Source: Amoeboaphelidium protococcarum X5 (lineage: Eukaryota; Fungi; Aphelidiomycota). From it: a DNA stretch of 64,000 nt. Location: positions 1 to 64,000 of the forward strand of contig JALDTO010000200.1 of the NCBI GenBank assembly GCA_023515725.1. Direction: 5' to 3'. Positions 2,239 to 6,285 of the stretch are shown here, piece after piece; position 1 is the first letter of the stretch, and every line of letters starts with the position of its first letter. The position numbers and the translations under genes were made by a program. The notes beneath the pieces were generated by a model. That model ran no database searches. It was not told the origin of the DNA and was given only the letters and a program-made list of their open reading frames with translations.

Positions 2239-4518
2239 ATGACTGGATCCCCAGTGGCGTTTGTATCTAATAATGAGGCTGTGGCTATTAGTTAAGAGGT
2301 TGTTAGTCGTCTGAAGGTCGCATCTCTAAATTCCAACTCGTCGATGGATTAACTGCTAATTGAGAGAGCCAATGCTGGTTATTGTTTAAATCCTCACAGT
2401 AATATTGAAATTCTTTAATCTCGTGGTGGGCAGAGTGGTGGCTTAGTGTAAGTTTGGAATTGGATCAGGAATTGTCAATAGCTTGCTGTGTAATAGAAAT
2501 GCTAATTTGGATCTGGCATTATAGCCGTGTTGCCGTCACCTCTTTATCATATATCTTAGTCTCCGAAGCGTTAATAATAATAATAATTCAATGAGGAGTC
2601 TTTATAATAAAAGAAGAAGCATAATAGATCAAGTGGCGGTAATTTTAATGCAACTGAATCTTCCTCTGCTGGTAATAATAATAAGAAGTCTCAGCAGTAA
2701 TCTTCATAACATCAGCGATAGCACAGAGCATCCACTGCTGCAATGGCTTATACAGCTCAGATTAACAGTCAGCTGTCTTTTACGTAGATTACAAACTCTG
2801 CTATGCCAGACTCTATCATTATACCGTCGCAGTCTATATAAAGTTATCAGCAATCGTAATAATAGTAAAAATAGTAGTAGCAACATAGAATTCAAGGCCT
2901 GGGAATTACTGGTGGTAGTGAACAATAGTAGCATTAGTTAATAGAAGATCACAATTAGATTGTAGTTGTTGATGGTGATGGAGATAGTAGTAGAGCTGAT
3001 AGAGAACTAGCTTTATAACTTATAGGTTGGGATTATGGATTAGATGCGATAAATTAGATTAACCAAATGACTGCAAAAGGTTCTTAGGACTCTTGTCTTT
3101 AAGCTGCAGCTATTTGTTTTATCAATGGAGATATACCAGCTGCAATAGATTGTGTCAAAGCGATTAATGGTGAAAGTGGGGATTAAACAGCTATTCTCAT
3201 TGCATTCAGTGGTATTCAGTAGATGTAATTATTCTATTAGAATAATAATCATAAAGCTGGAGCTAGTTATTATCAGCATTAAGTCAAGGTTTTAGATTTA
3301 TTACGGAAATTGTCGGATTAATTATCATAGAAATGGATAAGATTCATATTGGAGCTGGTGGTTAATAATGGCGACTTGTTAAAAGTTTTGCTTAGTGTGG
3401 ATTTTAACAATAGTAGTTAGAGTGGATTGAGTATGACTGAAGTTTTACAGATTGGATTGATGGCACTTAACGATTCACAACTTGGTCTCTTGCTATAACA
3501 TTGTGTAGAAGTTTCTAAAGCTCATGGTCTAGCTGAAGGCCTTCTTGTGACTGGACTTGTCATAAGAGACGGTGTGGAGATTATTTAAAAGTTTCTTACT
3601 CAATCAGATGATTTGCAAAGTGCAGCTCTGTTACTGTCATTGTTTAATGAAGACACTTTCAGTGCTCGAGATTAAGGGACAGCAGAAGATGTTTAGATGG
3701 GGCTCCAGTTTCTATAGGAATGTATACAGAACTATCAACAGTTTTTGAATAGACTTGAAATGTTTAATCAAAGGTGCCGATTTGATCTTGAAAGGAAGCG
3801 ATAATACCGGCGATGGAGTCCTAATGGTGGCGGTTCAGATTCAACTCAATTACAATATGGCAAGAGTCCTGGTGCATTGTCGGTAGGGAATAAAGCTTCA
3901 CCTGAGATGACGGTGGAGAAGTAGGTGTAGGCGGCGTTTGAACGTTTAAATTCCATTTAGCCTTAGCTCTATTTGAAATGTCACTACTGTAACTAAAGCA
4001 TTACCTAAGAGTCGATTTTCGTACCCGGTATTGGTGTGGTGGGAAATAAAGAGCGAAGTGCTGCGACATCATTCTCAGGTGCAAATCTACCGCTGCATAA
4101 AAGCTTTAATGCTGTCGTAAATACTGGTGCGATGAGTCGTTTGTCATCTGCAGGTGTAGGCGGTGGCAGTGGAAGCGATTCTTTGTCTAATAGCTCACCT
4201 TGGTCGTTCTAGTATCAATAGCATAATATCAGCGGTCATCCTAATTTGAAGCCTAATGCTTGTCCCAACTGCAGAAAGTCTCTTCCGAAGTGTTCCATTT
4301 GTCTTCTACCAATGGGCCTGCCCTTAGATACGGTGCTCTCTGCAGAAGACGGTGTATCTGATGATCCGGTGCGATACTGGTTCTCATGGTGTCCCAAGTG
4401 TCGCCATGGTGGACATGCAGTTCATCTATCCCAATGGTTCAAGTAACATTCGGTATGCCCTGTAGGCGATTGTTAATGTCAATGTTTCATCGTTGGTAGA
4501 CAAGTTGAACCCTAATGA
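2239..4518 (+). CDS. SEA4: GATOR2/SEACAT subunit Sea4/MIOS-like protein (solenoid plus C-terminal Zn-finger/RING)
   Basis: C-terminal CPNCRKSLPKCSICLLPMG...[36 protein letters not shown]; N-terminal ERANAGY..LVQVWNWI segment; start and end in frame 1 with TAR=Gln. Confidence 0.8.
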
Positions 4519-4659
4519 TTGTCGATTGATCAGTATCATATTCTGTAATAAGTTATAAATAGACATTGATTTATAAACCCACCAACCATTCTTCTTTATC
4601 ATGTCAAGTATTCTCTAATCTATCACAATCAAATATCGTGGCCAGTTAATATAAAGGGA

Positions 4660-6285
4660 ATGAAGATTGATGTCAAGTCTATTGCCTGGTTGTTGTTGCT
4701 GTAACTGATTATCGTGCTGGAAGCCTAAAAGTATAGCTGTCCATCGGTAGAGACTGAAGTGGGTGATGGTGATTCTGCGGCTGATTGGAAAGTGAACTAA
4801 ATCACATAATTAGATTTGGTATTTATAGTCGATCTTGCCGGTGCTAGTGGTGAAAAGTATTTTAATTAAATCAAGTCTCATCTGCTATGGATGGCCAGAT
4901 TGCTTCTAAATCGCTAGTACAACGCTATTGACGCGCGTGTGGCGTTGGTGACAATTGGTGGAATGAATACGCTGAGGCTTGCATTTAGTTCATCATTGGA
5001 AGATGTCATATCAGTGTTGAATGTGCTTAGATTATAGCCGGTATTTCAAGAAAGTTCTCTGGAAAGTCTTCGTCAAGTATTATCCGTACATGAAGATGTC
5101 TTGCAGCAGAGTCTGGTCAAAAATTGTCCACTACATTAAGGTTCGGCCTGTTAGTTGCAGTGGCGCGCAGATGCCAAGAAGAAGGTGATTCTATTCACAT
5201 ATGGCGACTCTGATCTCCCTGGATGTGAGCAAAATATGTATCCTCGGTAGAAAGATGTCTCTTTCTGTGCCATCGCCAAGTAGAACGATCACTGCAAGGA
5301 CGGCTTTGCAATAGAGCCTGCGTTTATTCCATCTAGTCCGTACCAGTTGAAAAGATAAACCGGCGAGTAGATTATATACAGATAATGGGTGAGACTTGAC
5401 AATGTTGAGAAGTTTGCTCTGGTTAATGCATTCCAGGCCGAGCTTAATGGAACTGTGTAGATAGTGGTGCAGAGTAAGGCCCGATTGTTGATATTTGGAC
5501 GGTCAGATTTGACGCGTGACGATTCGTCATTTCTGGATGGTCCTGTTAGTTCTCTGGATTCCAAGAACCCATTATGGGTAGAGTAGAATTAATCGGCGGG
5601 TATGAATAAACGACCGGCTGACCCAAGAACAGTGGCCGCATTGTAGTTTGGTGAGCCTGCGTAGAATGTTTACTTCAACAAGTCTTACTGGATTGGATTT
5701 GATGTTGAGCAGACTGTGAAGAACTTGAATAGTTAAGGACTTGAGTTGTCACTTTAAAGCCAAGTACTCAAACACAATTTGGAATAGAATTAGGCGGGGC
5801 AGTTTCGATTGTTTGATATAAAGCTAATGTAATCATCTCAGGAAGCCAAATCGTGGCTATTTAGGTTGATTATAAATGATACTCTCCATGAGCTGACTGG
5901 ATGCGCAATCATACCTCCAAACTTTCTAATACCTGGTGTTGAGTCTAAGCCCACTCCTACGCCAACTCCTGGCGATAATGATGTCAGCAAGGATGACGAT
6001 CGAAATAAGTTTGTGGGGGGAATTGTTGGTGGAGTCATTGCTGGATGTGCAGCGATTTCAGCAGGTATTGCAATAGCACGTCGTAGAGCTACCGTCAGAC
6101 CCGAGAGTATGGTATTTGAAATGAATGGAAACATGGCTCCCGTGTAGGACAATCCCCTGTATGCCAACTAAAATCGTGTTTATCACAATGAACTTTATCA
6201 GGGTGGCGGGGCAGCTTCAAACTCTGATCTGCCATCATTGCGTAATGCTGGAGGCAGTCGCGAAAACTTACTTTTGAATGCTTGA
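4660..6285 (+). CDS. Type-I membrane protein: signal peptide, VWA-like domain, Gly-rich TM, integrin-beta/SibA-like dual NPxY tail
   Basis: MKIDVKSIAWLLLLQLIIVLEA signal; LDLVFIVD..ARVALVT..WRADAKKKVILFT VWA-like strands; PTPTPTP linker; TM FVGGIVGGVIAGCAAISAGIAIA; tail DNPLYANQNRVYHNELY. Confidence 0.75.

What the first reader, a model, noticed from the sequence alone, without database searches (positions are those of the whole stretch)
4660..6285. Integrin-beta/SibA-like adhesion receptor in a fungus-related genome
Seen: signal peptide, VWA-like domain (LDLVFIVD..; WRADAKKKVILFT recalls the integrin beta-I GWR..LLVFST strand), a GxxxG-rich TM, and the tail NPLY-ANQNRVYH-NELY (6151-6198). 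The tail is only readable through TAG/TAA. Established: integrin-beta tails carry NPxY-x8-NxxY (talin and kindlin sites), Dictyostelium SibA combines VWA, Gly-rich TM and the same double motif, and fungi are regarded as lacking integrins. The MIDAS is degenerate (DLAGA rather than DxSxS), and no PSI/EGF stalk is visible. Inference: a compact talin-coupled receptor for amoeboid crawling, host attachment or phagocytosis.
Basis: partly seen in the sequence, partly recalled or inferred. Interest (0 to 1): 0.8.

Follow-up and report, generated by a model that had tools for sequence, protein, structure and literature searches.

The report
Integrin-like surface receptor in an aphelid
An algal parasite related to fungi encodes a small surface protein whose inner tail carries the double docking motif that integrins use to hold the cell skeleton through talin, but its outer adhesion domain has lost its metal-binding site, and it is an odd member of a small undescribed receptor family, not a true integrin.

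Summary
Window 4660-6285 (+) is one uninterrupted 541-codon gene with 26 in-frame TAA/TAG codons read as Gln, and TGA is the only stop. It encodes a signal peptide, a VWA-type head, a GxxxG transmembrane helix and a 68-residue tail with NPLY-x8-NELY.

A second copy on contig C158 is 88% identical. TM plus tail show 20 synonymous and 0 non-synonymous differences, so the tail is under very strong constraint.

It is not an integrin beta or a Sib by any family model tested: Integrin_beta, Integrin_b_cyt and vWA_SIBA-E give no hit, and no alpha subunit was found. It is the divergent fifth member of an aphelid family of VWA-TM-NPxY receptors. It aligns with the other members over 420 residues (E about 1e-19). 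Compared with them, it has lost three of five MIDAS ligands (DLAGA, Y181) and the mucin stalk, and it has gained a glycine-zipper TM.

The genome keeps full-length talin with an intact F3 pocket, and vinculin. No kindlin or PID-type PTB was found. Talin coupling is therefore plausible but untested.

The scan had already noted this family on other contigs of the same genome, and had noted the twin copy. I found no relatives outside Amoeboaphelidium protococcarum.

The parts
4660..6285 (+). Complete single-exon CDS, 541 aa plus TGA stop; TAA/TAG read as Gln
   Evidence: Identical to P0001. dN/dS is 0.18 against the twin copy.
4660..4725 (+). Probable signal peptide (aa 1-22, MKIDVKSIAWLLLLQLIIVLEA)
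   Evidence: Kyte-Doolittle hydropathy is above 1.6. It aligns with the paralogs' MKLLTSLAALLIAQTISA leader. No predictor was run.
4807..5934 (+). Family head (aa about 50-425): VWA-type domain with long insertions, ending at the conserved Cys415
   Evidence: Collinear with the paralog heads: BLASTP E=6e-19 to P0007 and 1e-18 to 1e-23 to the others. Pfam VWA scores 15.5 bits at aa 52-184, below the cut-off. The paralogs score above the VWA and VWA_2 cut-offs. The AF2 model of the paralog head aligns to VWA structures at Z 14.6-16.5 over residues 30-390.
4831..4845 (+). Degenerate MIDAS loop D58-L-A-G-A62 (family consensus D-A-S-G-S)
   Evidence: Family alignment. The twin copy has the same loop; strain protein P0006 has DLVGA.
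5200..5202 (+). Y181 in place of the MIDAS Asp of the beta4 'TD' motif (paralogs have T-D-E-D-S-D)
   Evidence: Alignments.
5947..5973 (+). Short Pro/Thr linker KPTPTPTPG, where the paralogs carry a 150-500-aa Ser/Thr-rich stalk
6010..6078 (+). Transmembrane helix aa 451-473 with GxxxG at 453, 454 and 458
   Evidence: The paralog TMs are Ala-rich and lack GxxxG.
6079..6282 (+). Cytoplasmic tail, aa 474-541: RRRATVR, NPLY, NELY, C-terminal ENLLLNA
   Evidence: 17 synonymous and 0 non-synonymous differences from the twin copy, dS 0.50. Identical in P0006. Aligns with the paralog tails, RR.RA..R ... NPLYA ... N.L[YF] ... EN[LI][LM].
6151..6198 (+). NPLY-ANQNRVYH-NELY double motif

Best explanation
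This is a functional type I membrane protein of Amoeboaphelidium protococcarum. It is the most divergent member of a five-gene family. Each gene is present as two diverged copies. The family plan is a VWA-type head, a stalk, one TM helix and a short tail with NPxY-x8-N(P)x[YF].

Shown:
- The gene is intact and under purifying selection.
- Its head is homologous over about 420 residues to paralogs that are bona fide VWA proteins with a canonical DxSxS...D MIDAS.
- In this member three MIDAS ligands are replaced (S60A, S62A, D181Y) and the mucin stalk is reduced to KPTPTPTPG.
- Its TM has become a glycine zipper.
- The cytoplasmic tail is invariant.

Inferred:
- The tail's membrane-proximal NPLY is read by the PTB-like F3 lobe of the organism's talin. 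This would link the receptor to actin and vinculin, as SibA does in Dictyostelium and integrin beta does in animals.
- The head binds its partner without a metal ion, as the VWF A1 and A3 domains do, and it sits close to the membrane.
- The GxxxG helix may pair it with another membrane protein.
- The likely cellular role is substrate or host-surface attachment of the amoeboid stage. It may act as a short-range or auxiliary receptor beside the long-stalked, MIDAS-bearing paralogs.
For: Real gene:
- The ORF equals annotated protein P0001.
- Against the twin copy C158:393176-394801, dN/dS is 0.18 overall and 0.15 in the VWA region.
- TM plus tail show 20 synonymous and 0 non-synonymous changes. 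The chance of zero at the ectodomain's dN is about 1e-7.

Family:
- The profile census finds exactly 10 loci, that is 5 genes in 2 copies each.
- The heads are collinear, with invariant IDA, QE.S.E..R..L, C.L.WR..A.K, DSD.P, QFG.P, SLQ, R.FDI and C...P blocks.
- The tails align.

VWA:
- Paralog P0007 scores VWA_2 50.1 bits and VWA 35.3 bits.
- PDB profile hits are collagen VI, ANTXR2 and a BatA-like protein.
- Fold search of the paralog model gives only VWA structures, Z up to 16.5.

Adaptor side:
- Talin is one ORF of about 2,600 codons. Its F3 piece matches talin-2 3g9w at E=4e-31 and keeps RWAA.
- Vinculin is full length.
- No PID-type PTB and no kindlin N-domain were found, so talin is the best available NPxY reader.
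- The same tail design sits on a PA14/Ig-type ectodomain at C214. This argues that the tail is a portable coupling module of adhesins.

Precedent: the SibA membrane-proximal NPXY is essential for talin A binding (PMC9197732), and SibA-talin carries force without integrins (PMC12686525).
Against: - No binding, localisation or expression data exist, and no RNA run was listed.
- The tail lacks the aromatic residue about 8 positions before the NPxY tyrosine that strengthens integrin-talin F3 binding (my own knowledge of beta3 W739). The nearest aromatic is F487, at -14.
- The second motif is NELY, not NPxY, and its usual reader, kindlin, was not found.
- NPxY is also a classic endocytic signal.
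- The dead MIDAS means that the family's presumed ligand-binding mode is lost here.
- The AF2 model of this protein itself failed (mean pLDDT 37.9). The fold evidence therefore comes through a paralog whose model is only moderately confident for aa 31-160.
- No orthologue outside the species was found.
Confidence: 0.55

Rival explanations
1. The NPxY/NxxY tail is a sorting signal. On this view the protein is a cargo or uptake receptor, or a protein that cycles between surface and endosomes. Its tail would be read by clathrin adaptors or sorting-nexin-type FERM proteins, not by talin.
For: NPxY is the LDL-receptor-type internalisation motif (established knowledge). The tail ends in a conserved acidic-dileucine-like ENLLL element that is shared as ENLMV/ENIMV with the paralogs. 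Three other FERM-domain gene pairs exist in the genome. SibA surface levels are themselves controlled by endocytic sorting (PMC3279395).
Against: No PID-type PTB adaptor was found. The exact x8 spacing of two motifs 22-25 residues after the TM is the integrin/Sib design and is kept on three different ectodomains. Sorting and talin binding are not exclusive, since integrin tails do both.
Confidence: 0.2
2. It is a non-adhesive regulatory or partner subunit. Having lost MIDAS and stalk, it would pair through its GxxxG helix with another membrane protein, for example a MIDAS-bearing paralog. It would then modulate or compete for the shared cytoplasmic adaptor instead of binding an external ligand itself.
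For: Three of five MIDAS ligands are lost but the head is still constrained (omega 0.15-0.22). It is the only family member with a glycine zipper. Its tail is even more conserved than its head.
Against: Purifying selection on the whole 400-residue head suggests that it still binds something. No evidence for heteromers exists. MIDAS-less VWA domains that bind ligands are well known (VWF A1 and A3, established knowledge).
Confidence: 0.15
3. It is a true, much reduced descendant of the ancestral integrin beta chain. In that case the fungal lineage did not lose integrin beta completely.
For: - The tail has NPLY-x8-NxxY at the integrin spacing.
- The family has E-x-x-F-[DE]-A after the GG turn and S-M-x-[DE] after DxSxS. 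From memory, these resemble the integrin beta-I MIDAS/ADMIDAS context.
- The best structural neighbours of the paralog model are integrin beta-I domains (Z 16.5, rmsd 3.1 A, 177 residues).
- Atlas feature search lists Integrin_beta and vWA_SIBA-E clusters at 0.87-0.89, which is a lead only.
Against: - PF00362, PF08725 and PF24909 give no hit in the genome or on P0001 and P0007.
- Sequence profiles hit collagen VI and ANTXR2 and never integrin beta, even at E<=10.
- Other VWA folds are within about 1-2 Z units of the integrin matches.
- There is no PSI, hybrid or EGF module and no alpha subunit.
Confidence: 0.08
4. It is a decaying paralog or a chance ORF.
For: The MIDAS is lost, the stalk is lost, and Pfam VWA scores only below the cut-off.
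Against: The gene has 1,626 nt without TGA. dN/dS is 0.18, with dS 0.35, between two intact copies. A third intact allele exists in another strain (P0006).
Confidence: 0.02

Closest known systems
Dictyostelium SibA-SibE (similar to integrin beta)
   Same: [quoted passage not shown] Both have a short tail with two NPXY-type motifs, of which the membrane-proximal one binds talin (PMC9197732). Both occur in an organism that has talin but no heterodimeric integrin (PMC12686525).
   Different: The Pfam model of the Sib VWA (PF24909) finds nothing in this genome. No repeat region is present. The MIDAS is dead here. The second motif is NELY. Kang et al. found no Sib outside Dictyostelia (bioRxiv 10.1101/2020.04.29.069435). 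Homology versus convergence is unresolved.
Metazoan/amorphean integrin beta chains
   Same: Both have a VWA-fold head, a GxxxG-type TM, a basic membrane-proximal stretch and NPxY-x8-NxxY near the C-terminus. Integrin beta-I domains are the top structural neighbours of the paralog model.
   Different: There is no Integrin_beta or Integrin_b_cyt match, no PSI/hybrid/EGF stalk, and no alpha partner or FG-GAP. There is no MIDAS. The protein is 541 aa, against about 800 aa for an integrin beta chain.
The aphelid's own VWA-stalk-TM-NPxY paralogs (C155, C205 x3, C233 x3; e.g. P0007 = MIR68_004457)
   Same: The heads are collinear and 24-27% identical over about 420 residues. The conserved Cys pattern is the same. 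The tail plan is the same: RR.RA..R, NPLYA, N.L[YF], EN[LI][LM].
   Different: The paralogs keep D-A-S-G-S...T-D, carry 150-500-residue Ser/Thr stalks and have Ala-rich TMs. Their second motif is NPL[YF].
Anthrax toxin receptors ANTXR1/2 (TEM8/CMG2)
   Same: These are the best or near-best PDB sequence matches of the family's VWA. They are also compact type I receptors with one VWA head and an actin-linked tail.
   Different: The similarity is weak (E 0.004-0.09) and covers only the first 85 residues. ANTXR has an intact MIDAS, an Ig-like domain and a long, unrelated tail.
Entamoeba Gal/GalNAc lectin and Acanthamoeba mannose-binding protein
   Same: Both are non-integrin adhesins of amoebae with integrin-like NPXY tails, proposed as alternative talin receptors (PMC12686525, discussion).

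Membership tests
Integrin beta | Beta-I domain recognised by Pfam Integrin_beta (PF00362) | tested here: not met
   There is no candidate in the six-frame genome search. It is not listed for P0001 or P0007 at E<=1. No integrin chain appears in PDB sequence or profile searches at E<=10.
Integrin beta | MIDAS DxSxS plus E and D ligands | tested here: not met
   The loop is D58-L-A-G-A62 and Y181 replaces the Asp. Only D58 and E131 remain.
Integrin beta | PSI, hybrid and Cys-rich EGF stalk | tested here: not met
   The only Pfam hit on P0001 is a weak VWA. The ectodomain has 7 Cys and a 9-residue P/T linker.
Integrin beta | Alpha-subunit partner in the genome | tested here: not met
   Integrin_A_Ig_1 and FG-GAP give no significant match. 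Absence is not proven.
Integrin beta | Cytoplasmic NPxY-x8-NxxY | tested here: met
   NPLY 498-501 and NELY 510-513. However, Pfam Integrin_b_cyt gives no hit.
Sib (Dictyostelium) | VWA recognised by Pfam vWA_SIBA-E (PF24909) | tested here: not met
   There is no match in the genome at E<=1. It is not listed for P0001 or P0007.
Sib (Dictyostelium) | Glycine-rich single TM | tested here: met
   GGIVGGVIAG, with GxxxG at 453, 454 and 458.
Sib (Dictyostelium) | Tail binds talin through the membrane-proximal NPXY | not testable with these tools
   The motif is present and talin F3 is conserved. Binding needs an experiment.
VWA superfamily | Sequence match to a VWA model | tested here: inconclusive
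   P0001 scores PF00092 at E=0.02, 15.5 bits, against a 23.8-bit cut-off. Collagen VI VWA matches at E=0.0098.
VWA superfamily | Homology to proteins that pass the VWA cut-offs, and VWA fold | tested here: met
   P0001 against P0007 gives E=6e-19 over aa 1-419. P0007 scores VWA_2 50.1 bits and VWA 35.3 bits. The P0007 model aligns at Z 14.6-16.5 to more than 50 VWA structures. The model is confident only for aa 31-160.
Aphelid VWA-TM-NPxY receptor family (undescribed) | Collinear head plus TM plus RR.RA..R/NPLYA/N.L[YF] tail | tested here: met
Aphelid VWA-TM-NPxY receptor family (undescribed) | Canonical MIDAS and Ser/Thr-rich stalk | tested here: not met
   Both are absent in this member and in its twin.

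The most novel reading that the evidence does not exclude
The aphelid VWA-TM-NPxY family, including this MIDAS-less member, may be a remote true homologue of integrin beta and Sib heads and tails. That would mean the lineage leading to fungi kept a stripped-down integrin-beta-type talin receptor instead of losing it. This gene could then be a metal-independent partner chain that pairs through its glycine zipper, giving an independently evolved two-chain receptor.
Probability: 0.12. Interest if true: 0.85.

Novelty: new variant of a known kind. Interest (0 to 1): 0.6.

Why it matters
Zoosporic fungi and their relatives keep talin, vinculin and other focal-adhesion scaffolds but have no integrin. 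What anchors talin to their membrane is an acknowledged open question (PMC5042518). Recent work shows that talin force coupling predates integrins and works through SibA in Dictyostelium, and it calls for more unicellular examples (PMC12686525). Sib proteins were reported as confined to dictyostelids (bioRxiv 10.1101/2020.04.29.069435).

An aphelid family with the same receptor logic gives concrete, testable candidates on the fungal side of the tree. This member is useful as a natural contrast. It has the same, extremely conserved tail, but no metal site, no stalk and a different TM helix. It can therefore separate what the tail does from what the head does.

Tried and rejected
1. Pfam on the ten stop-free pieces of the gene gave nothing useful.
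2. The word search with P0001 and with a profile (A1) returned only P0001 and the other-strain protein P0006. The third search, with a paralog piece, returned only P0007. The 'shared with chytrids and rumen fungi' statement of earlier notes could therefore not be checked.
3. AlphaFold of P0001 with a 14-row alignment failed (mean pLDDT 37.9), so it was not used for fold search.
4. Two metagenome scans (P0001, A5) found no relative.
5. No RNA run was listed.
6. The tail and the 'WRADAKKK' region gave no integrin hit against the PDB.
7. The reading 'chance ORF or pseudogene' was rejected on dN/dS.
8. The reading 'integrin beta orthologue' was rejected on the family models.

Method note: because in-frame TAA/TAG are sense codons here, tools were given only stop-free pieces or library proteins (P0001, P0006, P0007). 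Code-6 translations were made only inside scripts.

Full report
**What is in the sequence.** Window 4660-6285 (+) opens with ATG and runs 541 codons to the first in-frame TGA. The frame holds 13 TAA and 13 TAG codons. TGA-delimited ORFs tile the whole window, so this genome reads TAA and TAG as sense. Between the two genomic copies of the gene, 20 TAR codons are shared, 6 are exchanged with CAA or CAG, and the remaining 6 differ by a single base from another sense codon. This fits glutamine. The code-6 translation is identical to a protein in the public library, P0001. The gene is therefore a single exon as annotated. The nearest named proteins are hypothetical proteins of Amoeboaphelidium protococcarum: P0006 (MP228_012604) from another assembly, and P0007 (MIR68_004457) from the contig that is C155 of this assembly.

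**Anatomy**.
- aa 1-22: hydrophobic leader.
- aa about 50-425: head.
- aa 430-438: KPTPTPTPG linker.
- aa 451-473: TM helix FVGGIVGGVIAGCAAISAGIAIA, with three overlapping GxxxG.
- aa 474-541: tail, RRRATVRPESMVFEMNGNMAPVQD-NPLY-ANQNRVYH-NELY-...-ENLLLNA.

**Is it a real, working gene?** A second copy lies at G000:C158:393176-394801 (-). It is 89% identical in DNA, and the flanks are 86-87% identical. Talin, vinculin and every family member searched also come in such pairs, so the assembly holds two diverged haplotypes or subgenomes.
- Overall: dS 0.35, dN 0.061, omega 0.18.
- VWA region: omega 0.15.
- Rest of the head: omega 0.33.
- TM plus tail: 20 synonymous and 0 non-synonymous differences.
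- Tail alone: 17 synonymous and 0 non-synonymous, dS 0.50.

At the ectodomain's dN, about 16 replacements would be expected in TM plus tail, so the chance of seeing zero is about 1e-7. The other-strain protein P0006 is 94.5% identical to the twin copy and has the same TM and tail. The tail is therefore the most constrained part of the protein.

**What the head is.**
- Taken alone, the protein barely registers. Pfam VWA gives E=0.02 and 15.5 bits, below the cut-off, at aa 52-184. A collagen VI VWA domain in the PDB matches at E=0.0098.
- The six-frame search with PF00092 missed it but found VWA genes elsewhere in the genome.
- Several of those genes end in a TM and NPLY-x8-NPL[YF].
- Local phmmer and BLASTP show that the candidate is collinear with their first about 410 residues (E 1e-18 to 1e-23, 24-27% identity). 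The tool comparison with P0007 gives E=6e-19 over aa 1-419.
- P0007 passes VWA_2 (50.1 bits), VWA (35.3 bits) and VWA_4 (34.1 bits).
- A family profile finds exactly ten loci in the genome: this gene in two copies, C155 in two copies, and tandem triplets on C205 and C233.
- AlphaFold on the candidate failed (mean pLDDT 37.9).
- AlphaFold on the P0007 head gave a usable N-terminal half (pLDDT 63-85 for aa 31-160; mean 44).
- Foldseek and VIA-align then returned only VWA structures. Integrin beta3 beta-I scored Z 16.5 (rmsd 3.1 A, 177 residues). Pactolus, collagen VI, TFIIH p44, Rpn10, BatB, alphaM I-domain, CMG2 and LapA scored Z 14.6-16.4. The alignment spans model residues 30-390. ESM-Atlas neighbours are likewise VWA clusters.

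I conclude that the whole about 400-residue head is one VWA-type domain with long insertions. The ranking does not separate integrin beta-I from other VWA domains.

**What is special about this member.** The paralogs have D-A-S-G-S, a conserved Q-E after the GG turn, and T-D-E-D-S-D. The candidate has D58-L-A-G-A62, Q-E131 and T-Y181-G-D-S-D. Three of the five MIDAS ligands are gone. The same holds in the twin copy, and P0006 has DLVGA, yet the region stays under purifying selection. The paralogs carry 150-500 residues of Ser/Thr-rich stalk after the last conserved Cys, whereas the candidate has nine residues there. The paralog TMs are Ala-rich, and only this gene has the glycine zipper. The tails still align: RR.RA..R, an aromatic residue, NPLYA, x8, N.L[YF], and a terminal EN[LI][LM] element.

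**Is the motif more than chance, and who could read it?**
- A DNA pattern for NP.[YF]-x8-N..[YF] hits 33 places against 13 for the reversed control.
- Twelve of the hits sit 22-25 residues after a TM at a C-terminus. They are the ten family loci plus a pair at C214/C264, whose ectodomain has PA14-like and Big_9-like pieces. The tail design is therefore reused on another adhesin-type ectodomain.
- The genome has talin as one ORF of about 2,600 codons at C205:12777-20771, with a twin on C155. Talin_middle scores E=6e-36. The F3 piece matches talin-2 of the talin-integrin complex 3g9w at E=4e-31 and keeps the RWAA pocket residues.
- The genome also has full-length vinculin.
- Kindlin_2_N, PID, Integrin_beta, Integrin_b_cyt, Integrin_A_Ig_1, FG-GAP and vWA_SIBA-E gave no match. 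These are six-frame first-look searches, so absence is not proven.

**Comparison with known systems.** SibA is a type I protein with a VWA, a glycine-rich TM and two NPXY motifs. The membrane-proximal motif is essential for talin A binding (PMC9197732). SibA-talin transmits force without integrins (PMC12686525). Kang et al. saw no Sib outside Dictyostelia (bioRxiv 10.1101/2020.04.29.069435). Calkins and Youssef pointed out that basal fungi keep talin and vinculin without a known anchor (PMC5042518). My paper searches found no paper holding both Amoeboaphelidium and talin, and only one, from 2008, holding both aphelid and integrin. The candidate works like a Sib or integrin-beta-type receptor in its design, but it fails the membership tests for both families.

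**Caveats.**
- Talin binding is inferred.
- The tail has no aromatic residue about 8 positions before Y501. From my own knowledge, that residue matters for integrin-talin affinity.
- NPxY can also be a sorting signal.
- No expression data could be obtained.
- No relatives outside the species were found with the tools available.
- Earlier notes of this scan describe the paralog clusters and claim chytrid relatives. I confirmed the paralogs independently but could not test the chytrid claim.

**Verdict.** The gene is a new variant of a known kind, the Sib/integrin-beta-like talin-type adhesion receptor. It is notable as a MIDAS-less, stalk-less, glycine-zipper member with an invariant tail.

Noticed in passing
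G000:C214:68000-70000 (L063) and twin at C264:~1884135: An ORF of about 590 aa has PA14-like (E 5e-4) and bacterial-Ig (Big_9)-like pieces, a GxxxG TM and a tail NPLY-KPSSSESF-NPLY. This is the same tail design on a non-VWA ectodomain.
   Followed up: partly
G000:C205:12777-20771 (L068) and C155:~1063-1071 kb: Full-length talin sits in a single TGA-delimited ORF of 2,665 codons (about 2,600 aa of talin). Its F3 lobe is close to animal talin (RWAA kept) and it has a typical C-terminal dimerisation helix.
   Followed up: partly
whole genome G000: Every gene searched occurs as two copies about 86-89% identical in DNA on different contigs (this gene, talin, vinculin, the FERM genes). The assembly therefore contains two diverged haplotypes or subgenomes, with dS about 0.35.
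   Followed up: partly
window 6262-6282; L018:3256-3528; L018:6979-7248: A conserved C-terminal EN[LI][LM] element (ENLLLNA here, ENLMV or ENIMV in the tandem paralogs) ends the tails. It may be a sorting or PDZ-type signal and remains unexplained.
   Followed up: no
G000:C98:935243-937396 and C207:344939-347107: Two FERM_M matches lie about 1.8 kb apart in one locus, as expected for a MyTH4-FERM myosin. In Dictyostelium, myosin VII partners talin in adhesion. This was not verified here.
   Followed up: no
window 4384-4989 (-): A TGA-delimited ORF of 202 codons lies on the opposite strand and overlaps the start of the gene. It is most likely spurious, because with TGA as the only stop long open frames are common in this genome.
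   Followed up: no
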